From the IMG/VR virus record IMGVR_UViG_3300027759_000046, positions 189,138-253,137 of that record: a stretch of DNA of 64,000 bases. The stretch is one strand, 5' to 3'. Below are positions 4,889 to 63,333 of this stretch, one piece after another; position 1 is the first letter of the stretch, and every line of letters begins with the position of its first letter. The notes beneath the pieces were generated by a model. It was not told the DNA's origin. It saw nothing but the letters and a program-made list of their open reading frames with translations, and did not search any database. The position numbers were made by a program, and so were the translations under genes.

Positions 4889-4921
4889 GTAATTATTATA
4901 CTATCTGGAATAAATAAAGGT

Positions 4922-17091: not shown

Positions 17092-18234
17092 TTAGTTGCT
17101 TAGTGGTGCTTTTATTGCTGGGTGTGATTGATAGTTTTCTAATATAATATCATTTATTGAACTACAGTGAATGCCGTCTCTAACATGGACAGTTGGTAAT
17201 TTAAAAGGCTCTCGTGTACGATATGGTATTTTGTATGCATCATAATATTCGCTTAATCCTCCACCGAACGGAACTTGCTCATCAACTGCTGTTTGATAAA
17301 AATCTCCCATTGCAGTCTTTAACATTTCGTGACGTTCGTCTGGTGAGTAGCTTCTTCCGATTTGCTCTTCAACTGCATCCACGTGATTTAAGTAAAGGTG
17401 AACATCTCCTAGGTTTCCAATCAATTGATCAGGTATCATGTTGACTTCGTCAGCTAGCATAGTTAATAGTAAGCCATAAGATGCTATGTTGAATGGTAGC
17501 CCTAAGAACGTATCTACTGAACGTTGATTCCACATCAAAGAGATTGCTCTGGTTGGTATGTTTGAACCATCTAACATTTGATGAGTATATGGTGCAAAAG
17601 TACGAGCAATACCATCTCTTTTCTTTTTATATTCTGTTCTTTCTTCCAAACTCAACTCTCTTGTATAAACTTGGAATCCATAGTGACAAGGTGGAAGTAC
17701 CATCTGGTCCAATTCACCTACATTCCAAGCATTAACCATTAAACGTCTTGAGTCTGGGTTTGTTTTAAGGTCTTGTATTAGATTTTTGATTTGGTCTACT
17801 CCGCCATCAAATATAGCATTCCAATTCCTCCATTGTCTACCATAAATTGGACCCAACTCACCCCACTTCTTAGCAAACTCTTCATCCTTCATTGACTCGA
17901 CGAAAGCTTCTTCCTTTGTTACAAAAGGTCCCCAATCGATCACACCATTATGCTTTTCGTAATTCTTAATAGCATCACCATTCCAGATATGACAGTTATT
18001 ATCAATTAGGTACTTGATATTAGTATCACCACGTAAGAACCATAACAGCTCAGTCACAACAGATTTGAATGGCATCTTCTTAGTAGTAAGAAGAGGAAAT
18101 CCTTCTTGCATATTATGACGAATTGTATAGCCGAAGATTGAACGCGTTCCTGTGCCAGTTCGATCCTCCTTTACTACACCATATTCATTTATTGCATGAA
18201 GTAGATCTATGTACTGTTTATCTAAGTTATTCAT
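17092..18234 (-). CDS. thyA: thymidylate synthase
   Basis: DRTGTG, ELLWFL, GPIYG.QWR, LPPCH, QRSVD.FLGLPFN and GDVHLY. Confidence 0.97.
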   Translation of the reverse strand: MNNLDKQYIDLLHAINEYGVVKEDRTGTGTRSIFGYTIRHNMQEGFPLLTTKKMPFKSVVTELLWFLRGDTNIKYLIDNNCHIWNGDAIKNYEKHNGVIDWGPFVTKEEAFVESMKDEEFAKKWGELGPIYGRQWRNWNAIFDGGVDQIKNLIQDLKTNPDSRRLMVNAWNVGELDQMVLPPCHYGFQVYTRELSLEERTEYKKKRDGIARTFAPYTHQMLDGSNIPTRAISLMWNQRSVDTFLGLPFNIASYGLLLTMLADEVNMIPDQLIGNLGDVHLYLNHVDAVEEQIGRSYSPDERHEMLKTAMGDFYQTAVDEQVPFGGGLSEYYDAYKIPYRTREPFKLPTVHVRDGIHCSSINDIILENYQSHPAIKAPLSN

Positions 18235-21474: not shown

Positions 21475-22278
21475 TTATCGCTGAACTTCCGGCACCCAGT
21501 GAGTTGTGCGCCCGTCTAGAGTCTCTTCACGAACTACAGTATTTCCTTTGGGATCGAGCTTTTGTGCATAGACTTCAAATTCAAACACGAATTCTCCTTT
21601 TTCTCCGCCCAGCCTCTGGTAATTTCTGATACTGGCTCCACCTTGTGCGTATGAAGTTTTCATGATTTTCTGAATCCAGTTAAAGAGAACAGCTGTTTCA
21701 ACTTGATCAATATCTCTGACCAATCTATGCGGCGAAATGCCTGCTCGATAAAGCACTTCGCATTTAATATAATTACCTACGCCTGCGCACACTCTCTGAT
21801 CCATCAGCACCTCAACTATTGTCTTGTTAGGATACTTATTGATTGCTGAATTGAATTTAACTAGGGTGAACTCTGTATCATTGAGAGCATCTCCACCTAG
21901 ACTCGCTAATTTCTTGGTGAGCTCAGCTCTATCGTGAGAAAATTTAAGTGTACCGAACCTGCGTTGATCTACAAAATAGAGTGACCTGGTGTCATCGATA
22001 CCAATACCAAAGTGCGCGTGCTTATCTGGGTCAGTTGACCAGTAACCGCTCATACCCAATGTAATCCACACGGTTGCACCAGTTTCAAGCTCAAGCCACA
22101 TGAATTTACCCTTGACTCCTCCGCCGACTACTCGGCTTGGCAAGGACACCTCATCAATCCCAAGTGGTCTTTTTTTAAGAAATCTACCACTAAATACTTG
22201 TAACTGTGTTACTTGTGAATCTCCGATCTCTTTTCTGAGATCTTCATACACCCTTCTAACTTCTGGTCCTTCCGGCAT
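21475..22278 (-). CDS. mutM: formamidopyrimidine-DNA glycosylase (Fpg/Nei family)
   Basis: MPEGPEV N-terminus, LGMSG, DQRRFG and GVGNYIKCEVL; zincless-finger C-terminus. Confidence 0.92.
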   Translation of the reverse strand: MPEGPEVRRVYEDLRKEIGDSQVTQLQVFSGRFLKKRPLGIDEVSLPSRVVGGGVKGKFMWLELETGATVWITLGMSGYWSTDPDKHAHFGIGIDDTRSLYFVDQRRFGTLKFSHDRAELTKKLASLGGDALNDTEFTLVKFNSAINKYPNKTIVEVLMDQRVCAGVGNYIKCEVLYRAGISPHRLVRDIDQVETAVLFNWIQKIMKTSYAQGGASIRNYQRLGGEKGEFVFEFEVYAQKLDPKGNTVVREETLDGRTTHWVPEVQR

Positions 22279-24848: not shown

Positions 24849-24872
24849 ATTTTTATTATACTCTGATTAAAC

Positions 24873-26107: not shown

Positions 26108-27082
26108 TTAATCTAATACTTTTTCAAAGACTCTTTTATCATCAAACTCCAGGTAGTTTTCAAGTAATTTACCTGAATTCTGACGATACTGAAGTACTGC
26201 AAGATCTTTGGCCTTTGCCTCAACCTCGATATCGAAAGTGAGTCCATAAGTATTTATCTTCTCATAAACATGATCGGCATGTGAACGTGCAATAACCGTA
26301 GGATCCTCGAACGTTTTCCTACAGCTTGAATAGTGAGTAAGAGGTGTATGGCCGTGCCAAGTAGTCGAAGCAAGACGTAGCGCGGCTTCCTCAGTAAGAT
26401 CGCCAGTATTGAAACGGTGATGATGGAAATCGAATGTGATTGGCGTGCCGATTTTGCAATAGACTAACGAGTAAAGATCGGCAACTGAATACTGGGCAGC
26501 CTTATCGTCGTTTTCGACAACTAGACGAGCTTTTGTATTTGGGTGTAATACTTTAAAATTCTCGCAGAACCTAGCGGCAGCCGATTCCCTGTCGCCATAG
26601 GATCCACCTAGATGAATATTAATTGGGAACTGATAGGTAATAGGTAAACCCATTAAGGTCATAATCTCGGCATGCTGGTTAAGATCCTTGATTGTTTTAC
26701 GAACAACATTTGGATTTGGAGAACACAAGACATCGAACTGGCCTGGATGCATTGAGATACGCATGCCATGCTGTAGCGCAAATTCGCCAATTGCTTGCAG
26801 ATCAGGTAGAATATCGGCAAAGTTAGGTAACTCAGTAATCTCGTACTCGGACATCCATGGAAAGATATCGCTAGACATACGATACACAAAGATATCGTTT
26901 GCAAGATTCCAGCGCAGAATTTTAAGAATGTCCTTGACGTTTTGATGAGCGAGCTCGCCACAATATACTTGACCCTTTTCCTGAAAGGTTCTCTTGATCA
27001 TGCCACGGTTGGCTGTAATCTTTTGGTCGGCTAGTGATAAGTTAATACAGCAGTAGCCAAGTCTGACGTTAGAATTTTGCAT
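26108..27082 (-). CDS. uvsE: UV-damage endonuclease
   Basis: RLGYCCIN, YRMSSD, SMHPGQF, ENDD, FDFHHH and EAKAKD; ATG at 27082. Confidence 0.95.
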   Translation of the reverse strand: MQNSNVRLGYCCINLSLADQKITANRGMIKRTFQEKGQVYCGELAHQNVKDILKILRWNLANDIFVYRMSSDIFPWMSEYEITELPNFADILPDLQAIGEFALQHGMRISMHPGQFDVLCSPNPNVVRKTIKDLNQHAEIMTLMGLPITYQFPINIHLGGSYGDRESAAARFCENFKVLHPNTKARLVVENDDKAAQYSVADLYSLVYCKIGTPITFDFHHHRFNTGDLTEEAALRLASTTWHGHTPLTHYSSCRKTFEDPTVIARSHADHVYEKINTYGLTFDIEVEAKAKDLAVLQYRQNSGKLLENYLEFDDKRVFEKVLD

Positions 27083-27140: not shown

Positions 27141-27770
27141 TTAGAAATTAACCGATGAATAGTTTTTCGTAATTGACCTCAATACTCTCACAACGTCAAC
27201 TGCGTCCTGTAGAGCATCGTGTGTTACGATTCCGTCAATGCCTGCTCGCTTCATGCACTCAGCCAAATTCGGTAAACCTGCATCCTTTGTCCAATCCATG
27301 CACAAGATAGCTGGATCAATCATGCGTTGTCTGATCTGTACTGATGATGACCATCCTGTCAGTTTTTGCAGAAAGAGTTTATCAAATGTTGCAAAGTTTT
27401 TACCAGCAACGGTGATTCGGACTTGACCAGTTTTTGAGTCTGGATCGCCTAATCCGTTTGCCTGCAACCATAAGCCGAATGATTTTGCAACGAGGCCTTC
27501 GGGTAAGATATTGTATTTCTTACGCAAGTCAGCTCGCTCTTCTTTATTCGCTCGTTCCAATTCGCCAAGCTGAGCCAGAATATCCTTATTCATGACCAGT
27601 GCAAATGGGCTGCCTGTGTATTGAGGGTGTTCAACTAGACACTTAAATCTAGGCAGGTCCTCAATAGGTAATGGATTAGCTGTGTCCTCAATAACTGCAC
27701 CGATCTGAATCGTTTGGCAAGTTTCTGGATCTAATCCCGTTGTTTCTATGTCTATTGATACGTATTTCAT
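27141..27770 (-). CDS. DEDDh 3'-5' exonuclease
   Basis: DIETTGLD, GKNFATFD and HDALQDA. Confidence 0.9.
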   Translation of the reverse strand: MKYVSIDIETTGLDPETCQTIQIGAVIEDTANPLPIEDLPRFKCLVEHPQYTGSPFALVMNKDILAQLGELERANKEERADLRKKYNILPEGLVAKSFGLWLQANGLGDPDSKTGQVRITVAGKNFATFDKLFLQKLTGWSSSVQIRQRMIDPAILCMDWTKDAGLPNLAECMKRAGIDGIVTHDALQDAVDVVRVLRSITKNYSSVNF

Positions 27771-27790
27771 GTAGTCTATTATACTATAGG

Positions 27791-28208: not shown

Positions 28209-28688
28209 TTAGAAATCTGGGTTTGTTATTTTTATATCGTAGTTTTGGAAATTTTCAAAGTCTTTGCGATCAGCCTCAATACGGCGATCAACTGAGTCGC
28301 CTGGCATATTACGGTGAGTCATACGTTCACGCCTAACCTCTTCATCAATATCAATAAAGATTACCAATGAATCTTTACGGGAGTCATCAGACAGGTGAGC
28401 TAAGCCGCTTGGTGTCATGATGAATATGTCATCCTCTTCAAATTGAGTTCGAGTAGTTCCGTAAATCCAGCCGTTAAACTCAACGTATTCATAGAACTCG
28501 TCATTTTTAATTAGACTCGCCGCCTGTTCTGGAGTCAAGAAGAAATAGTCTTGTCCATCAACTTCGCCTTCTCTTGGCGGGCGTGTTGTGTAACTAACTG
28601 CGTATTTAAAGCCGCGTGATTCAAATTTTTTGCGAAGGTAATCTTTGCCGCTTGCAGCACGACCTACTATGATTATTCGTTTATGCAT
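28209..28688 (-). CDS. gmk: guanylate kinase-like nucleotide kinase
   Basis: GRAASGKD, TTRPPREGEVDGQDYFF and YGT. Confidence 0.88.
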   Translation of the reverse strand: MHKRIIIVGRAASGKDYLRKKFESRGFKYAVSYTTRPPREGEVDGQDYFFLTPEQAASLIKNDEFYEYVEFNGWIYGTTRTQFEEDDIFIMTPSGLAHLSDDSRKDSLVIFIDIDEEVRRERMTHRNMPGDSVDRRIEADRKDFENFQNYDIKITNPDF

Positions 28689-28694
28689 ATATGA

Positions 28695-29993
28695 TTAAAA
28701 TTCTCTTTGTGTTTCGTATACTGTTTTAATAACTGGAAATCTTAATGAGTGGTTTCCGTGTTGATCAGTCGTTTCTTCAAAAAACTGAACCGTAATTGTT
28801 TTACCTAAAATTTCATTTGGGTTTTGAAAGTAGTGGCGACGTTGTTCAAGAGAAAAACCTGATCCAACTCTGACTTGATTGCCTTTATGCTGAACGAATA
28901 CTGCTTTCAGCATTTCCTCTTCTTCTTCACGGCCGTTTTCAATAACTCGGTGAGTTCCGTTTTCAAGACCAGTTACTTGATACTCAGCATCATGCATCTT
29001 TTTAACCTTTAACAGGTTCTTTGAGCGTTTGCCTTCGTATCCAACATCCTTACGAATCATGATGCCTTCGTATCCCATTTCAGTTGCATCAGCTGCAACC
29101 TTTTCAAAATGTTCTCGATCAGTTAATTTGAATTGAGGCAATGGCTCTGCGAATTCCAGTCCAGTACTCGATGCCACCAAGTAAGCATTTATCATGACTA
29201 ACCTAGCAGATAGAGTTATTTCGCTTGTTCCGCTTGTAAATTCGTCAAGATCCAATAGGTCAAATACATAATACTTTGGAGTTTCAATAGTGTGGTCCTT
29301 TTTGCCTATTTCTTTGATAATCCCCTGAAAATCTTCAAGGCCAGAATCTCGCATGATACAAACTTCGCCATCTAGAACTTTAGACCTAAGACCCAATTTC
29401 ATAAGGTCTTGGCGTAAAGCATCGAGAGTTAAGAACTCCTTGCCTTGACGAGAAAAGAACTTAATATCACCAGCTTCATCAATTACGGTGATGCAACGAA
29501 CTCCGTCTAGCTTACGACTTGCCCACCACATACCTGAATCAAAATCTACTTTCTTCTCAGCCGATTCAAATTTTTCAGCTAATGCAACTTCAAAGGTCGG
29601 CACTGTCCCAGGCAGGACAGAATTGATTAAGGTAGAGGTTGCTCGGGTTTTAATATTGCGATCTATCACATCATAGATGATGTCTGCGAACTCCTTATAT
29701 TTTGCGATAAAACCATTAACTGCTTGTATTGCATTGTGGCCAGTCACATGACGTTCATTCAGATCATCAAGCATCGCAAACAGATCAGTATAATTATCGA
29801 AAATTAGGTCAGATCTCTTTTTGAGATTTGCTGAAGTAACATGATACTGCTTAAATGGCGTGTACGTGTACTTAAATATTTTTCGTAGGAATGGAGAATC
29901 GTATTTTTGCAGAATCTCTTTTTTGGCATTAGTCGAAGAAGTAGCTTTCATCTCTTCAATAAACTCCCTAAGGTTGGTAAAGTCTGTATGCAT
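28695..29993 (-). CDS. ATP-dependent DNA ligase
   Basis: KLDGVR, LDGE, EGIMIR, LLKVK, VGSGF and SLRFP. Confidence 0.95.
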   Translation of the reverse strand: MHTDFTNLREFIEEMKATSSTNAKKEILQKYDSPFLRKIFKYTYTPFKQYHVTSANLKKRSDLIFDNYTDLFAMLDDLNERHVTGHNAIQAVNGFIAKYKEFADIIYDVIDRNIKTRATSTLINSVLPGTVPTFEVALAEKFESAEKKVDFDSGMWWASRKLDGVRCITVIDEAGDIKFFSRQGKEFLTLDALRQDLMKLGLRSKVLDGEVCIMRDSGLEDFQGIIKEIGKKDHTIETPKYYVFDLLDLDEFTSGTSEITLSARLVMINAYLVASSTGLEFAEPLPQFKLTDREHFEKVAADATEMGYEGIMIRKDVGYEGKRSKNLLKVKKMHDAEYQVTGLENGTHRVIENGREEEEEMLKAVFVQHKGNQVRVGSGFSLEQRRHYFQNPNEILGKTITVQFFEETTDQHGNHSLRFPVIKTVYETQREF

Positions 29994-30016
29994 ACAATTA
30001 TTATACTATACAAAAC

Positions 30017-34729: not shown

Positions 34730-35209
34730 TTAGCGAAGGCGATCTAAAATTATGCGCTGGGACGCAGAAACGTGTGTGTATGCCTCTTCGACATCCATAA
34801 AACCTGCCCAGTCAAGTTCTTCAAGCTGAAGTTGTTCTTTTGGAACACGTAAGCCAGTCAAGCCGATTTCAGATAGCTCAGAGATTCTGCAAACCAGATA
34901 ATGAATGTTATTCTTGAATTTAGTCCCGCTCCAAACTTCGGCAGTTTGTATGGCAGGTTCAACTTGGTCTTGGCGAATCCGAAGACCTGTCTCCTCAAAT
35001 GTTTCGCGAAACGCTGCTTCTTCTGGAGATTCTCCATCTTCCATTTTTCCCTTGGGAATTCCCATAGTGGGTTTAACCCAACTTGAATTAGTTGGATGCA
35101 CCAATAGGATCATAGGTTTTTGAGTGTCAGCTGGTGTATAAACTATTGCAATACCTGCCGAATCAGATCGCTTCTTAGGCTTTGTGAAATTATCGAAAGT
35201 ATCAATCAT
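34730..35209 (-). CDS. Nudix hydrolase
   Basis: Nudix box PKGKMEDGESPEEAAFRETFEETGL. Confidence 0.93.
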   Translation of the reverse strand: MIDTFDNFTKPKKRSDSAGIAIVYTPADTQKPMILLVHPTNSSWVKPTMGIPKGKMEDGESPEEAAFRETFEETGLRIRQDQVEPAIQTAEVWSGTKFKNNIHYLVCRISELSEIGLTGLRVPKEQLQLEELDWAGFMDVEEAYTHVSASQRIILDRLR

Positions 35210-35399
35210 TTGAATTATTATCTAGAAATCGTTGACGATATATTGCGTTCTTTACTTGGTCTCGACGCTTAACGCTAGGCTTCTTAAATTCTTTTCTATC
35301 TCTTAACTCAGTTAGAGTTTTAGTTTTACTGAATTTCTTTTTTAAAACCTTTAGAGCTCGGTCGATCGAGCCAATTTCTTGTACGTTAACTAATAGCAT
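35202..35399 (-). CDS. rpsU: ribosomal protein bS21 (Bacteroidota type)
   Basis: SIDRALKVLKKKF...ELRDRKEFKKPSVKRR...AIY. Confidence 0.95.
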   Translation of the reverse strand: MLLVNVQEIGSIDRALKVLKKKFSKTKTLTELRDRKEFKKPSVKRRDQVKNAIYRQRFLDNNSND

Positions 35400-38506: not shown

Positions 38507-38532
38507 TAAAACTAGTCACTTTTTATTATTTA

Positions 38533-39594
38533 TTAGAGACGACTAGCTATTTGGGTTAGAATTTTATAGTAATCACCACGAGAGCAATCTGATATAAATT
38601 TACAGATTTCGAAGAAATCGTCAACTGTCTCAAATGACATTGCTGGATGAAATCTTGAATCTTTATATGAAACTGGAATTGTTCCAAAAATGACCGATTC
38701 ATAAACTCTTGCTGGAATAAATCCTTCTTTTAGATATAGATCTTTGCTGACATTTACTGAGACTTGCGCAAATTGCATATTTTCCCAAATACTAGTTCGG
38801 TTATCTCTTGGACATAGTGAGACTCTAGTAAGGTTGCCAATCCAGTTTTCCAAAGTTTGATCAGATTTTGCAGCAACCATCATGCTAAACGGGCTACCGT
38901 CGAATTTGCTAGTGCTGTCAATTTCAGAAATAATATCATTGATGATTGGATTCTTGGAATGACCTTCTTTATAATTATCAAATGATAAGTTTCCATAATA
39001 CATGATATAGTTTGGAGCCTTATTTGAGAATTTTTCATGTACGTCTAAACATGCGTCCATAAATTCTTTACTGCAACCTGGCATTGTAATTGATGGAATT
39101 TGACGACTTATGCCTAATTCTGAAATCGTACGCAGAAAACTTGGAGATAGGGAAAGATCTGTGTCTAGGATAACGATATCAGCTGGATCATATCCTGAGC
39201 TAAGGGCAAGTTCGATAATTCTCTCAAAATAAGCAGCATCTCTTAATTTCTTTTGTAGAGTCGAAAGATTTCTGAAACGAGCCTTTAAGAATAATTTTGA
39301 ATATTTCTTATTTCGAATATTTTCAATGACTTGGCTTTGGCCTATTTGATATGTCTCGAGCAATTTATTTGAGAACTTATTAAAGACTTCGCCTAATTTA
39401 TCATTTGGAAACATTGGTCGCAGTAGCGAGTCTCCATCAGTATGTAGATAATTTACAAAATCAAATTTTTCAACTGAGTATTTCTTTGAGAGTTCGTCAA
39501 TTAATCCGAGTTGATAAAAAGTATGACCTGGAATGTTATCGTCGAATATTCCTAATTGGCCAAAATAGGCGTAGAGTGCTTTGTTCGTTTCCAT
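38533..39594 (-). CDS. GT-B glycosyltransferase (T4 beta-glucosyltransferase/CgeB-like C-terminus)
   Basis: YYGN...VSVNVSKDLY..FIPARVYESVIFGTIPV. Confidence 0.6.
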   Translation of the reverse strand: METNKALYAYFGQLGIFDDNIPGHTFYQLGLIDELSKKYSVEKFDFVNYLHTDGDSLLRPMFPNDKLGEVFNKFSNKLLETYQIGQSQVIENIRNKKYSKLFLKARFRNLSTLQKKLRDAAYFERIIELALSSGYDPADIVILDTDLSLSPSFLRTISELGISRQIPSITMPGCSKEFMDACLDVHEKFSNKAPNYIMYYGNLSFDNYKEGHSKNPIINDIISEIDSTSKFDGSPFSMMVAAKSDQTLENWIGNLTRVSLCPRDNRTSIWENMQFAQVSVNVSKDLYLKEGFIPARVYESVIFGTIPVSYKDSRFHPAMSFETVDDFFEICKFISDCSRGDYYKILTQIASRL

Positions 39595-39971
39595 AATACG
39601 TATTTTACTAGAACACCGTCATTTGGTTCTATGTCAATTCTGTTATTGTAAAAAATATCCCAAGAGTCTGCGGCATACTGACCAATTCCGTATAATTCTC
39701 GTGGATGTTGCCAATCCGATTCAGACCATTCAGTACTAAATCGGATTAGAGCTTTCGCTCTGCGATTATAAAAACCAAGTGGACGAAGTAGTTCTGATAA
39801 TTCTTGAGGATCTGCCTGCGACATTGCTATTGCAGTTGGATACCTTTCAAAAAGTTCAGCTCTAATTCCGTCCACTTGTACTCTTCTAGTACAGTTCAGG
39901 AGAATACAACAGACTTGGGATTTCCAAGGATCGTCATGATAAATCTCCTGAAGTAGTTCGAATGGGCTCAT
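39552..39971 (-). CDS. MBD4-like HhH-GPD DNA glycosylase
   Basis: DPWK..CILLNCT, LRPLGFYNRRAKAL, LYGIGQYAADS and PND. Confidence 0.88.
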   Translation of the reverse strand: MSPFELLQEIYHDDPWKSQVCCILLNCTRRVQVDGIRAELFERYPTAIAMSQADPQELSELLRPLGFYNRRAKALIRFSTEWSESDWQHPRELYGIGQYAADSWDIFYNNRIDIEPNDGVLVKYVLWKRTKHSTPILAN

Positions 39972-40772
39972 TTACACGTTTTTAAATCCGGCAAAGTGAG
40001 TAATAAAATGCTTGTTTGTTCCAGCACTGCGGTTAACAAAAATTCTGTCGAAATTGTTTTCCATAATTGACATTACTTCGTTAAATTTCTCAGAACGATT
40101 TTCCAATAGCCAGCTGTAATGAAAATGGTATTCAACAATGAATAGTTTAATATGACTCCAGTCAGTAATTGACTTGATCATCTCGTATTCCATACCTTCA
40201 ATATCCATCTTGACACAATTGACTTTCTTTAATACGTCATTGATATTTTCAGCCGGCACAGTTACAACCTTACGACCTTTTACTGGATGGACAGAGTGTT
40301 TACCTGAATCTTGTGATAAGAAGAACTCTACTTCAGATTCATGGCCTGGGACAATCGCCTTTTCGATAATCTCGCAACGGCCCTGTACTCCATTCATTTC
40401 TAAATTTTGTTGAGCAAACTCGACATTATTATGAAACGGTTCGTAAGAGTAAACTTTCTTGATTTTTGGGAATTGGGTTAGCAAACGAGTTGCAAAGATA
40501 CCAATATGAGCACCTGCGTCTAACCATGTATCTTCTTGATTAAGATCTTCAAGAGTTAATGGATTACCGTCCTGTGCATAGTGGGGTAAAAATAGGGGCT
40601 TAAAATACTCTCCGCCAGTCGGCTTCATTGAGATATTTTGAGATACATTGAACTTTATTTCATCTTCTGAACGAACTAGAAATTGATATTCATGATATTT
40701 TGTTTTCTTTTCGAAAACTTGAAGGGTGCCTGCTTCGCGAGCTTCTTCAATCGAGCATAATACGTCTGCCAT
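39972..40772 (-). CDS. FkbM-family SAM-dependent methyltransferase
   Basis: LDAGAHIGIF, YEP, KMDIEGME and VEYH. Confidence 0.9.
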   Translation of the reverse strand: MADVLCSIEEAREAGTLQVFEKKTKYHEYQFLVRSEDEIKFNVSQNISMKPTGGEYFKPLFLPHYAQDGNPLTLEDLNQEDTWLDAGAHIGIFATRLLTQFPKIKKVYSYEPFHNNVEFAQQNLEMNGVQGRCEIIEKAIVPGHESEVEFFLSQDSGKHSVHPVKGRKVVTVPAENINDVLKKVNCVKMDIEGMEYEMIKSITDWSHIKLFIVEYHFHYSWLLENRSEKFNEVMSIMENNFDRIFVNRSAGTNKHFITHFAGFKNV

Positions 40773-40805
40773 TGTCTAAATAGTGTTTAGACTATTATAC
40801 TACAA

Positions 40806-41063
40806 TTACTTATCTTGGTCTAAATCAAATGGAGTATCTTGAATAGAAAGTTTCTTATCGTCACTTTGGCTTACACCAGATAGTTGATAATCAGTATCCT
40901 TTGGCTTTTCAAGTTTTTCGATATCAGCACCTTTGACTCTGAGCATTTTATTGTCAGCAGTCATTATTTGATAAACTCCATTAATTGGGTCAGTCCCAAC
41001 TATTCTGCCTGAACGACCGTCATTCAATACAATTCGATTACCGACTTTGTATTTAGAGGCCAT
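40806..41063 (-). CDS. small SH3-like beta-barrel protein
   Basis: YKVGNRIVLNDGRSGRIV. Confidence 0.5.
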   Translation of the reverse strand: MASKYKVGNRIVLNDGRSGRIVGTDPINGVYQIMTADNKMLRVKGADIEKLEKPKDTDYQLSGVSQSDDKKLSIQDTPFDLDQDK

Positions 41064-42634: not shown

Positions 42635-42710
42635 TGAACTGGGTGTCTTTTTTTGTTATTTATTTGGCACGTTCGCTAACTTTATTTATCTATGAACGAC
42701 TATTGTTATT

Positions 42711-60990: not shown

Positions 60991-63333
60991 CTATATGAGG
61001 CCGAGAGCGGTCTTTATTTTATCAATTACCGTTGATGTTTTGATTGTTCTAGAGCACTCAAACATTCGGTGAGTTCCTTTGTGTACTGGACACCAGTTCC
61101 AATCAGCCGGATCAAGCTTGTGAGTATTGAAACAGCCTGAACATTTGCCGGCTGGTGCACAAACTCTATGAGTGTTCTCAACCGTTTCGGTGTAATCATA
61201 CGAGAATCCTGAAATAAGGACAAGTGGGGTCGTGGTTGCCCAAGCCAACCAGCTTAGTCCACTACCAATTCCTACAAAGACTTGAGACTCTTCAAGTTCA
61301 CGAATGACATTCTCGATTGGACCTGACGCTAATTTGCGAACGCTAGTTGGATGAGAATTACCCATGAAGCCATCTTCTTCTCTTGACACCAGCACTACTT
61401 CATAACCGGTTTCCTTACACCAGTCAACTACTTCTTGCCAGCCGTCTGGATTATTCCAGTATTTTGCTTGGCATGTGCCGTGAATTGCGATTGCGATCTG
61501 TTTTTTCTTTTCAACCTTTGGAATCGCAAGTAGAGGTTTAGTCTCTTTATACTCAAGACCCAAGATATCAAATGCACATTTTTGCATTGCCTGATCCTTG
61601 ACTTCTTTGACGTTTCGGTTTAGATCAATTTTATGATCTTGATCGTAATACCAGCCAATATTGTACATTGCAACAATATTATCAACAACATCGCCAGGTT
61701 TAATGAACTCAATTTCCGGATACTGTTTTTCAAAAAGTTGGTTTAGATGAGTTGAACAAATTACCTTGCAACCGTGCTTCTTACGAAACTCTTCAACTGC
61801 TGGAAACCAGGCCAAACTATCGCCAAGAGAAGATGAATCTACTGAAATATAGACTCTACGATCTTTTAGGCTAATTGACTCGTCTAGGACAAGTTGACCG
61901 CTTTCTTTGTGAGTTACCTTAACTCTCCAATCAATATAGTATCGCTTATTTGACTTGACCCACATATTACGGGTGATTGTGTCCTTGTGCTCGACCTTGC
62001 CAGTTTTCTTATTAATAAACTCAACTAAGTATTCGCCTGGGGCTCCCCCAGTTATCTCTACGTGTGGTCCATTTACGAAATGATAGTTAATAGTCAAGTC
62101 TTTTGCACGCTTTAGATTCACCTCTCTGATGTGACTTGAACGTTCATCAATATGATCAGCTGCAAGCCGTGCAACTCTATCCCAGTTAAAATCTTGATGG
62201 ATCTTTTGAGCATCAGCTAGCGCCTTCTCCTTATGTGATTTATAATTTAAGTAGGCATCTCTCATTGCTCTACGTAAGTCGTTAAAATCAGGCTCATAAT
62301 AATTGCCAACGATATCTGCAGTAGTTACGGTCGGTTTATCTTCCGCTGAGCCAAGCGCTGAGCGTTCGCCAACAATTTTGACTGGAATACCTTTGCCTTC
62401 AGCAAACTCCATTTGGCCTGAGCACTCTGAATAGATTGATGGAGTTCCGCAAGCCATTGCCTCGATTAGTGGCAGATTCCAGCCTTCACTACGCGCACAT
62501 GATACAAATACGTTAACTGACTTGATTAGGTCAACGTACTCTTTTCTTGGCGGCATGTGTAATACTTTAATACGGTCGTCTTTGAATTCGTATTTTGCTA
62601 AGCGCTCTTCGGTTGTTTGACAACCGTCTGCACTAAAGCCCCATGGATTATCAGCAGATAAGATTAGATCTACAGGTTCGTCCGCTGAAAATTCTTCCAA
62701 GAAAGCTCTAACTATTTCGGTTGTAGATTTGCGGTAATCCCAACGACCGAATAGGCCGAATGTAAATCGGTCTTCTCCGGTTAATGGATGAACGACATTT
62801 TCAGGAAAGAATGTCTCAATATCAACTCCTTCTGGGATTACAAATATTTTATCAGCTGGGTAGCCCTGTTTGACTGTGCAATCTCGTTGCCATTTAGACG
62901 GAACCCAAACTTCATCAAATTCTAATAACTTATCAAAGAACTCTGATGGCTGTAGCGTTGATTCCCAAACGTTATAGGCAATCTTGTAATTATCGTAATT
63001 GTGATAAAAGTAATGATGATTAGTTTCGTTTAGAATTAGGTCGACATGAGTCTGGCCGAGGTTTGGCCAAGATTGATATACTTTATGATCGCTAAGAGTA
63101 CGATCTCCATTCCATAGAGATTGCTCAACAAGTAAAGACTTGATCTGATCTGTCATATACGCCTCACCATTATGAGGTTCGTCAGACATACCCTCCCACG
63201 AAGATCCTACTGTGTAGTTTCGGATTTCAAGAGGAAGCCTCTCTGCTAATTTTGTGAAAAATGATTGAGCATGATTATTATAACCGGTATTGCCAATAAA
63301 AGATGTGTGGACCTTGAGTTTTAACTTTGACAC
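60991..63333 (-). CDS. GT4 glycosyltransferase fused to Aah/TibC-like O-heptosyltransferase domain
   Basis: EGWNLPLIEAMACG (GT4); SLGDSLAWFP, GIGSGLSWLAW and CSGCFN..WCPVHKGT.RMFECSRTI (Aah/TibC Cys ligands). Confidence 0.88.
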   Translation of the reverse strand: MSKLKLKVHTSFIGNTGYNNHAQSFFTKLAERLPLEIRNYTVGSSWEGMSDEPHNGEAYMTDQIKSLLVEQSLWNGDRTLSDHKVYQSWPNLGQTHVDLILNETNHHYFYHNYDNYKIAYNVWESTLQPSEFFDKLLEFDEVWVPSKWQRDCTVKQGYPADKIFVIPEGVDIETFFPENVVHPLTGEDRFTFGLFGRWDYRKSTTEIVRAFLEEFSADEPVDLILSADNPWGFSADGCQTTEERLAKYEFKDDRIKVLHMPPRKEYVDLIKSVNVFVSCARSEGWNLPLIEAMACGTPSIYSECSGQMEFAEGKGIPVKIVGERSALGSAEDKPTVTTADIVGNYYEPDFNDLRRAMRDAYLNYKSHKEKALADAQKIHQDFNWDRVARLAADHIDERSSHIREVNLKRAKDLTINYHFVNGPHVEITGGAPGEYLVEFINKKTGKVEHKDTITRNMWVKSNKRYYIDWRVKVTHKESGQLVLDESISLKDRRVYISVDSSSLGDSLAWFPAVEEFRKKHGCKVICSTHLNQLFEKQYPEIEFIKPGDVVDNIVAMYNIGWYYDQDHKIDLNRNVKEVKDQAMQKCAFDILGLEYKETKPLLAIPKVEKKKQIAIAIHGTCQAKYWNNPDGWQEVVDWCKETGYEVVLVSREEDGFMGNSHPTSVRKLASGPIENVIRELEESQVFVGIGSGLSWLAWATTTPLVLISGFSYDYTETVENTHRVCAPAGKCSGCFNTHKLDPADWNWCPVHKGTHRMFECSRTIKTSTVIDKIKTALGLI

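What the first reader, a model, noticed from the sequence alone, without database searches (positions are those of the whole stretch)
38533..40772. Methyltransferase - HhH glycosylase - beta-glucosyltransferase-like operon: candidate DNA hypermodification system
Seen: three abutting or overlapping genes behind one GTATAATA motif. They are an FkbM methyltransferase, an MBD4-like glycosylase and a GT-B protein whose IPARVYES segment resembles the T4 BGT C-terminal R-V-W-E motif. Established: phage base hypermodification loci combine glycosyltransferases, methyltransferases and glycosylase-fold enzymes. Inference: the operon makes a methylated sugar adduct on DNA and repairs or discriminates it.
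Basis: partly seen in the sequence, partly recalled or inferred. Interest (0 to 1): 0.65.

Follow-up and report, generated by a model that had tools for sequence, protein, structure and literature searches.

The report
Candidate phage DNA sugar-modification gene cassette
A 253-kb uncultured freshwater phage carries a three-gene early-type cassette (methyltransferase, MBD4-like DNA glycosylase, unclassified GT-B glycosyltransferase) that most likely puts a sugar, perhaps a methylated one, on hydroxymethylcytosine in its own DNA; this is a new variant of the T4 type of DNA protection.

Summary
Three minus-strand genes lie behind one GTATAATA motif: an FkbM methyltransferase (39972-40772), an MBD4-type glycosylase domain (39552-39971; E 1e-28 to solved MBD4, catalytic Asp kept) and a 353-aa protein with no Pfam, PHROG or NCBIfam match (38533-39594) that folds as GT-B.

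The fold does not single out T4 BGT. Context points to DNA as the acceptor:
- The genome encodes a second ThyA-family enzyme with the dCMP-hydroxymethylase signature.
- Distant homologues of the glycosyltransferase sit in unrelated phages beside such ThyA-like genes, UDG-superfamily proteins, nucleotide-kinase-like genes and DNA polymerases.
- The cassette shares its promoter motif with topoisomerase and ligase genes, whereas both flanking genes carry the ATAAATA motif found ahead of tail-sheath and other virion genes.

Across 74 related loci the glycosyltransferase is constant. The methyltransferase is lost in a few lineages and the glycosylase repeatedly.

Best reading: post-replicative glycosylation of 5-hydroxymethylcytosine, optional O-methylation of the sugar (inferred), and accessory repair of deaminated modified cytosine. 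No chemistry was tested. The main rival is virion-protein glycosylation.

The parts
40793..40800 (-). GTATAATA promoter-like motif (extended -10 type), with a GACC box at 40817-40820 about 16 nt upstream. This is the early/middle promoter class of the genome.
   Evidence: The same motif precedes the topoisomerase II subunit A gene, the DNA ligase gene, ClpP and many small ORFs.
40774..40792 (-). Inverted repeat GTCTAAA-CACTA-TTTAGAC between the promoter motif and the MT start codon. It could be an operator or a 5' hairpin; its function is unknown.
   Evidence: Read directly from the sequence. Not tested further.
39972..40772 (-). FkbM-family class I SAM-dependent methyltransferase, 266 aa. Inferred O-methyltransferase acting on the transferred sugar.
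   Evidence: PF05050 and TIGR01444 above cut-off. D85/G87/H89/G91 are invariant in 16 homologues. AF2 pLDDT 92.4. Rossmann methyltransferase fold, FkbM 2py6 Z 12.5. Present in most related loci.
39552..39971 (-). MBD4-type HhH-GPD DNA glycosylase domain, 139 aa, without a methyl-CpG-binding domain. Inferred repair of hmU/T/U opposite G.
   Evidence: PF00730 above cut-off. E 1e-28 to solved MBD4 glycosylase domains with the catalytic Asp kept. The nearest phage homologues are in the Xp12 group. Variable across relatives.
38533..39594 (-). GT-B fold glycosyltransferase of a narrow, unnamed, phage-only family, 353 aa. Inferred DNA (5-hydroxymethylcytosine) glycosyltransferase.
   Evidence: No family match. 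Family of 245 word-search hits and 58 representatives at 50% identity. AF2 pLDDT 92.5. GT-B fold. Context of distant homologues.
38527..38533 (-). ATAAATA late-type promoter motif ahead of the downstream 791-aa gene. It overlaps the GT stop codon and marks the 3' boundary of the cassette.
   Evidence: The same motif precedes tail sheath, head-closure-like and virion structural genes.
42657..42663 (-). ATAAATA late-type promoter motif ahead of the upstream 512-aa gene. It shows that the flank belongs to the late class.
28209..28688 (-). Guanylate-kinase-family NMP kinase, 159 aa, just downstream of the DNA ligase gene, which carries the early-type motif. It is a candidate kinase for modified dCMP. 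The link is weak and inferred.
   Evidence: PF00625 E 1.5e-21. Position next to the ligase gene.

Best explanation
The cassette is the post-replicative part of a T4-like cytosine hypermodification pathway in a 253-kb phage.

1. Inferred from residues: a ThyA-family enzyme encoded about 170 kb away (genome 57783-58664) converts dCMP to 5-hydroxymethyl-dCMP, and the base enters DNA during replication.
2. Inferred from fold and from the gene neighbours of distant homologues: the 353-aa GT-B enzyme binds an NDP-sugar in its C-terminal domain (K209, K214, R296, E299 region). It transfers the sugar to the hydroxymethyl group of a flipped-out hmC in duplex DNA, as T4 BGT does.
3. Inference only: the FkbM methyltransferase then O-methylates that sugar using SAM.
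4. Function inferred from strong homology: the MBD4-like glycosylase removes hmU, T or U paired with G, which arise by deamination of the modified cytosines. This starts base excision repair that phage ligase and nucleases can complete. It is an accessory and is lost in many relatives.

The three genes are transcribed from an early/middle-type promoter, separately from the late virion genes on either side.
For: 1. Hydroxymethylase in the same genome. A second ThyA-family gene has MilA CMP hydroxymethylase (E 1e-18) and T4 dCMP hydroxymethylase (E 1.3e-17) as its best solved relatives, ahead of thymidylate synthases (2e-11). Aligned to T4 gp42 it keeps C148, D145 and D179. In E. coli ThyA numbering that is L143D and N177D with D169 retained. 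PMC13326640 gives this as the signature of 5hmdCMP synthases, not 5hoC synthases. The gene lies among PolB, UvsX-like, DnaB, Mre11/Rad50-like and dCMP deaminase genes. It is conserved in 4 of 4 relatives that are at least 81% complete.

2. Context of distant GT homologues.
- L105: dUTPase_2, P-loop kinase-like, UDG, GT and ThyA-like genes follow one another, with the last three overlapping end to end; then PolA, a methyltransferase, dCMP deaminase and RecA.
- L080: UDG-like, kinase-like, GT, then a ThyA-like gene 2 kb on, next to PolB.
- L111: kinase-like, UDG, GT. L107: UDG-like, GT. L106: GT, PolB.
- Both ThyA-like genes next to a GT homologue (L105, L080) carry the same signature.
- The kinase, GT, ThyA-homologue order matches RB69, DLP3 and RL38J1. 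Gene 42 and b-gt are adjacent in T4.

3. Promoter class. The cassette shares its motif with topoisomerase and ligase genes. Both flanks carry the motif of tail sheath and virion genes.

4. Fold and features. GT-B fold with T4 BGT at Z 16.2. A PF09198 cluster is among the best Atlas fold rows at TM 0.67. Language-model features score 0.95 and 0.94 to PF09198 clusters. Motif parallels: LFTD100IRL vs LDTD146LSL, and R269VWE vs R296VYE.

5. A non-homologous DNA glycosylase (UDG superfamily) sits next to the GT in distant phages, as the MBD4-like gene does here. The Xp12 (5mC DNA) homologue of the HhH gene lies beside the dCMP-modifying ThyA homologue.

6. Site avoidance. CATATG occurs 0 times against 31.7 expected in this genome, and GATATC is the most depleted palindrome in many relatives. 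NdeI cuts 5hmC and glucosyl-5hmC T4 DNA completely. EcoRV cuts 5hmC DNA completely.
Against: - No chemical evidence of any modification exists.
- In this clade the GT and the hydroxymethylase-like gene are about 170 kb apart. The GT sits between late, probably structural genes.
- The GT family is acidic (pI 5.7, family median 5.7) whereas T4 BGT is basic (9.05).
- Fold scores do not separate T4 BGT from GT4 enzymes that act on small molecules, lipids or teichoic acid. hhalign sees no sequence relation to BGT.
- The genome has two more GT1/GT4-type glycosyltransferases that could be the DNA enzymes instead.
- The methyltransferase fold gives no substrate.
- The glycosylase is dispensable, was lost repeatedly and is not relocated in relatives that lack it. 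The phage also carries Fpg/Nei and UvdE, so it may be general repair.
- The dCTPase candidate is below the Pfam cut-off.
- Site avoidance is indirect, and GAATTC and GGATCC are also depleted in some relatives.
Confidence: 0.55

Rival explanations
1. Virion-protein glycosylation. The glycosylase is an unrelated repair gene that landed in the same hot spot.
For: - In all 70-odd clade loci the GT sits between the 512-aa and 791-aa genes. Both of those carry the late motif shared with tail sheath and virion genes.
- FkbM enzymes usually O-methylate hydroxyl groups of sugars and other metabolites (family knowledge).
- The GT is acidic.
- The middle gene is variable.
- One distant homologue lies next to baseplate genes.
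Against: - The cassette has its own early-type promoter, shared with replication genes and not with its neighbours.
- Six of seven distant GT homologue contexts are DNA or nucleotide metabolism, three with a UDG-superfamily gene and two with a hydroxymethylase-like ThyA gene.
- HhH-GT pairs persist where the MT is lost (L041, L042, L070).
Confidence: 0.17
2. The GT glycosylates DNA, but the MT does something else. It could methylate the hydroxymethyl group itself, a nucleotide or another base, or an unrelated small molecule or protein. The DNA adduct would then be an ordinary unmethylated sugar.
For: - The MT fold is generic: TYW2, Trm5, CbiT and FkbM tie at Z 12.5-13.
- The MT is missing in four loci that keep the GT.
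- Distant GT clusters carry unrelated methyltransferases (Methyltransf_12, MT-A70) instead of FkbM.
Against: - The MT lies directly upstream in the same promoter-defined unit in more than 90% of the loci where the upstream region is present.
- MT and GT diverge roughly in parallel across the clade, MT 43-98% and GT 38-75% identity.
- FkbM-GT fusions exist in uncultured phages (BFVD row 44).
Confidence: 0.15
3. Modification of a host surface glycan or of a small metabolite. The GT and MT would alter lipopolysaccharide, capsule, teichoic acid or a metabolite during infection, for example for superinfection exclusion. No DNA would be involved.
For: - The top structural neighbours include TarM, BshA, PimA, WaaG and the tetrahydrobiopterin glucosyltransferase.
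- Early expression would fit a host-takeover function.
Against: - The family is restricted to viruses.
- No membrane segment is evident in the model.
- The genomic neighbours of distant homologues are DNA enzymes.
- Known phage DNA glycosyltransferases hit the same set of solved structures.
Confidence: 0.08

Closest known systems
T4 beta-glucosyltransferase with dCMP hydroxymethylase gp42 (glucosyl-5hmC DNA)
   Same: - GT-B fold of the same size (353 vs 351 aa; Z 16.2).
- A ThyA-family enzyme with C148, D145 and D179 equivalents is in the same genome.
- The GT is next to a ThyA homologue in distant relatives, as 42 and b-gt are in T4.
- Motif-level parallels at the proposed catalytic Asp and the RV[WY]E nucleotide-binding segment.
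- Language-model features and an Atlas fold row point to PF09198.
   Different: - No detectable sequence homology (no PF09198 hit; hhalign probability 0.5%).
- Acidic instead of basic.
- In this clade it is placed away from the hydroxymethylase gene and is accompanied by an FkbM methyltransferase and an MBD4-like glycosylase, which T4 lacks. The sugar and its anomeric form are unknown.
5-hydroxycytosine arabinosylation and glycosylation clusters of RB69, DLP3 and RL38J1 (PMC13326640)
   Same: - The cluster logic of ThyA homologue, nucleotide kinase and GT-B glycosyltransferases, seen here in the distant GT homologues (L105, L080, L111).
- Their glycosyltransferases hit the same solved structures: BshA, tetrahydrobiopterin GT, tll1591, sucrose-phosphate synthase.
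   Different: - The ThyA homologues here keep D169 and lack the D169N change that marks 5hoC synthases, so hmC and not 5hoC is predicted.
- No sugar-nucleotide synthesis genes were seen next to the cassette.
- Those systems include no methyltransferase or glycosylase.
MBD4 glycosylase domain (mammalian T:G, U:G and hmU:G mismatch glycosylase) and its homologue in 5mC phage Xp12
   Same: - Full-length match to the MBD4 catalytic domain (E 1e-28) with the catalytic Asp kept.
- 41% identical to an Xp12 protein encoded beside the dCMP-modifying ThyA homologue, dCMP deaminase and DHFR.
   Different: - Only the 139-aa catalytic domain is present, with no methyl-CpG-binding domain.
- Substrate untested.
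- Here it is embedded between a methyltransferase and a glycosyltransferase.
FkbM-family O-methyltransferases (PF05050, TIGR01444)
   Same: Above-threshold family membership, a SAM-binding D-x-G-x-H-x-G loop and a class I methyltransferase fold.
   Different: No FkbM enzyme was found linked to a DNA adduct in the papers searched. The substrate here is unknown.
Metavirome GT-B DNA glycosyltransferases associated with thymidylate-synthase homologues (Pyle et al., bioRxiv 10.1101/2023.12.21.572611)
   Same: - GT-B enzymes associated with ThyS, that is, pre-replicative pathways.
- Such clusters are also found in neighbourhoods with phage structural genes.
   Different: I could not establish whether this family was among their roughly 25,000 contigs. 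That paper does not mention glycosylases or O-methylated or methylated sugars in its text.

Membership tests
T4 beta-glucosyltransferase family (Pfam PF09198) | Sequence match to the family profile | tested here: not met
   No Pfam hit at E 0.01. hhalign of T4 BGT against the 40-sequence family alignment gives probability 0.5%.
T4 beta-glucosyltransferase family (Pfam PF09198) | GT-B two-Rossmann-domain fold of about 350 residues | tested here: met
   AF2 pLDDT 92.5. 1qkj Z 16.2 with 275 aligned residues. A PF09198 Atlas cluster gives TM 0.67.
T4 beta-glucosyltransferase family (Pfam PF09198) | Catalytic Asp (D100) at the end of an N-domain strand, and Arg/Glu (R191, R195, R269, E272) binding UDP | tested here: inconclusive
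   Invariant D144/D146 in LDTDLSL after strand 140-143, and invariant K209, K214, R296 and E299. These parallel BGT LFTD100IRL and R269VWE272. No residue-level structural superposition was available. The roles of the BGT residues are recalled from the literature.
T4 beta-glucosyltransferase family (Pfam PF09198) | Acceptor is 5hmC in duplex DNA | not testable with these tools
   Only indirect evidence: a hydroxymethylase-like gene in the genome and the neighbours of distant homologues.
FkbM methyltransferase family (PF05050 / TIGR01444) | Profile match above the curated cut-offs | tested here: met
   PF05050 49 bits against a cut-off of 22.7. TIGR01444 69.4 bits against 37.7.
FkbM methyltransferase family (PF05050 / TIGR01444) | Class I SAM-binding fold with a glycine-rich loop | tested here: met
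   LDAGAHIG with D85, G87, H89 and G91 invariant. Rossmann methyltransferase fold, 2py6 Z 12.5 at 20% identity.
MBD4 / HhH-GPD DNA glycosylases | HhH-GPD domain with helix-hairpin-helix and catalytic Asp | tested here: met
   PF00730 37.9 bits against a cut-off of 26.2. Solved MBD4 structures match at E 1e-28 over residues 2-133. LYGIGQYAADS aligns with LHGIGKYGNDS.
MBD4 / HhH-GPD DNA glycosylases | N-terminal methyl-CpG-binding domain (full MBD4 architecture) | tested here: not met
   The protein has 139 aa and consists of the glycosylase domain only.
MBD4 / HhH-GPD DNA glycosylases | Excision of T, U or hmU opposite G | not testable with these tools
   Requires an enzyme assay.
T4-type dCMP hydroxymethylase (ThyA superfamily), gene at genome 57783-58664 | ThyA-family membership with a catalytic Cys | tested here: met
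   PF00303 71 bits, above cut-off. The Cys aligns with T4 C148.
T4-type dCMP hydroxymethylase (ThyA superfamily), gene at genome 57783-58664 | N177D (cytosine specificity), L143D/E (non-methyl product), D169 retained (not a 5hoC synthase) | tested here: met
   DFVC, RSND and TPTD motifs. Criteria taken from PMC13326640.
Clustered phage cytosine-hypermodification locus (ThyA homologue + kinase + GT side by side) | GT adjacent to the base-modifying ThyA homologue | tested here: not met
   In this genome the two genes are about 170 kb apart. The feature is met only in distant GT homologues, L105 and L080.

The most novel reading that the evidence does not exclude
The phage replaces cytosine with an O-methylated glycosyl-5-hydroxymethylcytosine, which would be a methylated sugar on DNA, made by an unclassified GT-B family together with an FkbM methyltransferase. 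The same operon would carry a dedicated MBD4-type glycosylase that proofreads the deamination products of this hypermodified base. A UDG-superfamily protein would play the analogous role in unrelated phages that carry the same GT family.
Probability: 0.25. Interest if true: 0.75.

Novelty: new variant of a known kind. Interest (0 to 1): 0.6.

Why it matters
If correct, four things follow.
- A narrow, purely viral GT-B family without any database model joins the known DNA glycosyltransferases.
- A widespread clade of roughly 250-kb freshwater phages, whose UvsX is closest to Lak and other huge phages, would have hydroxymethylcytosine-based, glycosylated genomes.
- Sugar O-methylation becomes a possible further layer of DNA hypermodification.
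- Recurrent pairing of the GT with two unrelated kinds of DNA glycosylase suggests that phages with modified cytosines carry their own repair for deaminated modified bases.

Such modifications affect restriction, CRISPR targeting, sequencing-library bias and the recovery of these phages from metagenomes.

Tried and rejected
- Nucleotide and protein searches of the GT region against 50,697 phage records found nothing, so no cultured relative carries this GT.
- Profile search of the GT family against solved-structure sequences gave only noise.
- hhalign of T4 BGT against the family found no signal.
- The 355-aa protein beside the L080 GT is not a paralogue of the GT.
- Methyltransferase: sequence search against solved structures and two fold searches gave only generic class I methyltransferases and no substrate clue.
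- No MazG and no TET/JBP (the control was also silent, so this is uninformative).
- The dUTPase_2-like dCTPase candidate is below cut-off.
- tblastn of the L105-type UDG, kinase-like and dUTPase_2 proteins against this genome found nothing.
- The HhH gene is not relocated in five relatives that lack it at the locus, but those records are only 24-84% complete.
- The Atlas feature search for the 512-aa flanking protein gave no usable hit.
- Contigs of an RNA library cover most of the cassette at 99% identity or more, with a gap over the promoter. Contigs cannot show transcription, starts or strand, so I draw no conclusion.
- I considered and rejected a 5-hydroxycytosine pathway, because D169 is retained.
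- No complex prediction was run, because I do not claim that these proteins bind each other.
Full report
**What is there.** The window is bases 189138-253137 of a 253,137-bp IMG/VR virus record judged 94% complete. On the minus strand lie three tightly packed genes.
- A 266-aa gene at 40772..39972.
- A 139-aa gene at 39971..39552, which starts on the base after the first gene's stop.
- A 353-aa gene at 39594..38533, which overlaps the second gene by 43 nt.

The first is an FkbM-family SAM methyltransferase (PF05050 E 1e-12, TIGR01444 E 4e-19). The second is an HhH-GPD protein (PF00730). Its whole length matches solved MBD4 glycosylase domains at E 1e-28, with the catalytic Asp in place. The third has no Pfam, PHROG or NCBIfam match.

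**The third protein.** It belongs to a family seen only in metagenomic and viral contigs and never named: 245 hits in the word search, and 58 representatives at 50% identity among 1.84 billion proteins. A 40-sequence alignment shows about 58 invariant positions. It gave a confident AlphaFold model (pLDDT 92.5). Foldseek and VIA-align place the model firmly in the GT-B fold. T4 BGT scores Z 16.2, but this ties with tetrahydrobiopterin glucosyltransferase, TarM, BshA, PimA and others at Z 15-17. The fold alone therefore does not say that DNA is the acceptor.

**How close is it to T4 BGT?** Sequence-profile comparison with T4 BGT finds nothing. Three weaker signals lean towards BGT.
- T4 BGT does have R269VWE272, LFTD100IRL and YGGSFR191SGQR195. 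The window family has invariant R296VYE299, LDTD146LSL and YYGN..K209..K214 in matching secondary-structure positions.
- Protein-language-model features place PF09198 clusters among the nearest clusters (0.95 and 0.94, with 193 and 185 shared features).
- A PF09198 cluster is one of the three best Atlas fold matches (TM 0.67).

The protein is acidic (pI 5.7) while BGT is basic (9.05), which counts against a simple analogy.

**A hydroxymethylase elsewhere in the genome.** Besides a canonical ThyA (window 17092-18234), the genome has a 293-aa ThyA-family gene at genome 57783-58664. Its best solved relatives are MilA CMP hydroxymethylase and T4 dCMP hydroxymethylase, ahead of all thymidylate synthases. 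Aligned with T4 gp42 it keeps C148, the Asp three residues before it, and D179. In E. coli ThyA numbering it has L143D and N177D, with D169 retained. A 2026 paper gives exactly these positions as markers of substrate and product, and D169N as the marker of 5-hydroxycytosine synthases (PMC13326640). By those criteria the enzyme is a 5-hydroxymethyl-dCMP synthase. The gene sits among PolB, UvsX-like, DnaB-like and Mre11/Rad50-like genes, next to dCMP deaminase. It is conserved in all four relatives that are at least 81% complete. A dUTPase_2-like 155-aa protein before PolB is a sub-threshold dCTPase candidate. A guanylate-kinase-family gene lies just downstream of the DNA ligase gene.

**Conservation of the cassette.** In 74 related IMG/VR loci the order is fixed: 644-aa gene, 512-aa gene, (85-aa gene), MT, [HhH, another small ORF, or nothing], GT, 791-aa gene.
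- The GT is always present.
- The MT is missing in L041, L042, L058 and L070.
- The HhH gene is present in roughly half of the loci. It occurs in the most distant subclade and also as HhH-GT pairs without the MT.

On a quick GT tree the full trio appears in two deep clades. HhH presence needs at least 4-7 changes, including a very recent loss between near-identical GTs. The careful tree search did not finish, and several long branches make deep joins unsure. In the distant subclade the HhH protein is better conserved (49-56% identity) than the GT (38-40%) or the MT (43-47%). Five relatives that lack it at the locus show no copy elsewhere, but those records are incomplete. The trio is thus an ancestral arrangement in which the GT is core, the MT nearly so, and the glycosylase an accessory.

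**The most telling evidence: distant GT homologues (24-33% identity) in unrelated phages.**
- L105 has a 20-kb replication cluster: DnaG primase, dUTPase_2, a P-loop kinase-like protein with a DxDxT motif, a UDG-superfamily protein, the GT homologue, a ThyA-like gene overlapping it, PolA, a methyltransferase, dCMP deaminase, RecA and MT-A70.
- L080 has a UDG-like gene, a kinase-like gene and the GT, then a ThyA-like gene 2 kb on, beside a split PolB.
- L111 has kinase-like, UDG, GT. L107 has UDG-like, GT. L106 has GT, PolB.
- L108 has the kinase-like gene before the GT and baseplate genes after it, with GmrSD_N and Lar domains upstream.

Both ThyA-like genes next to a GT homologue (L105 and L080) have the same L143D, D169, N177D signature. 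The kinase, GT, ThyA-homologue order is the layout of the proven cytosine-glycosylation clusters of RB69, DLP3 and RL38J1. In T4, gene 42 and b-gt are neighbours. A DNA glycosylase of a different superfamily (UDG) takes the place next to the GT that the MBD4-like gene holds here. This suggests a functional pairing and not a chance insertion.

**Promoters.** Two upstream motifs dominate the genome.
- ATAAATA, about 25-30 nt before the ATG, precedes 59 genes. These include the tail sheath, a head-closure-like protein and a virion structural protein. It also precedes both genes that flank the cassette.
- (TA)GTATAATA occurs 29 times, 24 of them intergenic. It precedes the topoisomerase II subunit A gene, the DNA ligase gene, ClpP, many small ORFs and the MT gene.

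The cassette is therefore a separately controlled unit of the replication-gene class set between late genes. This weakens the argument from position for virion glycosylation.

**Restriction-site avoidance (indirect).** Among all 6-bp palindromes only CATATG is strikingly avoided in this genome, at 0 against 31.7 expected. Palindromes that contain C or G are otherwise no more depleted than AT-only ones. In many relatives GATATC is the most depleted. NdeI is one of the few enzymes that cut both 5hmC and glucosyl-5hmC T4 DNA completely. EcoRV cuts 5hmC DNA completely and glucosylated DNA very partially (PMC7653180). This fits a genome whose cytosine modification blocks most enzymes, so that only the few unblocked sites need to be avoided. 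GAATTC and GGATCC are also depleted in some relatives, so the evidence is only suggestive.

**The methyltransferase and the glycosylase.** The MT model (pLDDT 92.4) is a generic class I fold. TYW2, Trm5, CbiT and FkbM 2py6 tie at Z 12.5-13. Its substrate rests only on family habit (O-methylation of hydroxyl groups) and on its operon partner. The nearest phage homologues of the glycosylase are in the Xp12 group, whose DNA carries 5-methylcytosine in place of cytosine. There the gene sits beside the dCMP-modifying ThyA homologue, dCMP deaminase and DHFR. The window phage also encodes Fpg/Nei, UvdE, an exonuclease and a ligase, so general repair is a fair alternative role.

**Verdict.** DNA, most likely 5-hydroxymethylcytosine, as the acceptor of the GT is the best-supported reading (about 0.55-0.6). 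Sugar methylation is plausible but untested, and the glycosylase is best seen as accessory repair of deaminated modified cytosine. Virion-protein glycosylation remains the main rival. The system is a new variant of the T4 type of DNA hypermodification. It uses a GT-B family that fails the sequence test for the T4 BGT family but plausibly works like it.

Noticed in passing
whole genome G000; window included: CATATG (the NdeI site) is completely absent from the 253-kb genome, 0 against 31.7 expected (z -5.6). GATATC is the most depleted 6-bp palindrome in many related loci. NdeI cuts both 5hmC and glucosylated 5hmC T4 DNA completely, while EcoRV cuts 5hmC DNA completely but glucosylated DNA only very partially (PMC7653180).
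   Followed up: partly
genome-wide; in the window e.g. 27777-27784, 29999-30006, 24854-24861, 4894-4901 (all -): In many GTATAATA sites the ATG follows the motif by only 5-7 nt (ligase, exonuclease and UvdE genes and several small ORFs). This would make those mRNAs leaderless or nearly so. A conserved RACC box lies about 16-17 nt upstream.
   Followed up: partly
window 35202-35399 (-): A 65-aa gene is homologous to neighbours that carry Pfam Ribosomal_S21 in related contigs (L005, L006). It is followed by a NUDIX hydrolase gene (34730-35209). This is a phage-encoded ribosomal protein S21.
   Followed up: partly
window 21475-22278, 26108-27082, 27141-27770, 28209-28688, 28695-29993 (all -): A DNA-repair set: Fpg/Nei glycosylase, UvdE UV endonuclease, RNase T-like exonuclease, guanylate-kinase-family kinase and ATP-dependent DNA ligase. 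The UvdE, exonuclease and ligase genes carry the early-type motif just upstream (the kinase gene follows the ligase gene; the Fpg/Nei upstream region was not examined).
   Followed up: partly
window 60991-63189 (-); genome 67609-69234 (+): Two further glycosyltransferases. One is a 732-aa protein with a GT4 domain plus a GT9/TibC-like domain. The other is a 541-aa protein with a C-terminal GT1 domain. They could extend a DNA glycan or glycosylate proteins.
   Followed up: partly
window 39763-39796 and loose ends at 39438, 39473, 40740, 40772: Contigs of DNA runs break or branch inside the HhH gene and at the MT start. This suggests co-existing variants of the cassette in natural populations.
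   Followed up: no
L107:166-1164: A GT homologue (P0137) translates to the recorded protein only if TGA is read as Trp, according to the look-up tool. A member of this family may thus sit in a recoded phage. I applied no alternative code.
   Followed up: no
L080:14992-16176 (-) and L080:5156-7795: The distant locus carries a Cas12f1-like/TnpB-type gene just downstream of the ThyA-like gene. Its family B DNA polymerase is split into two ORFs (572 and 293 aa).
   Followed up: no
genome 50716-51909 (L086:2716-3909): The UvsX/RecA-like protein is closest (35-38% identity) to Lak megaphages of Prevotella and other huge uncultured phages. This hints at a Bacteroidota-type host lineage.
   Followed up: partly
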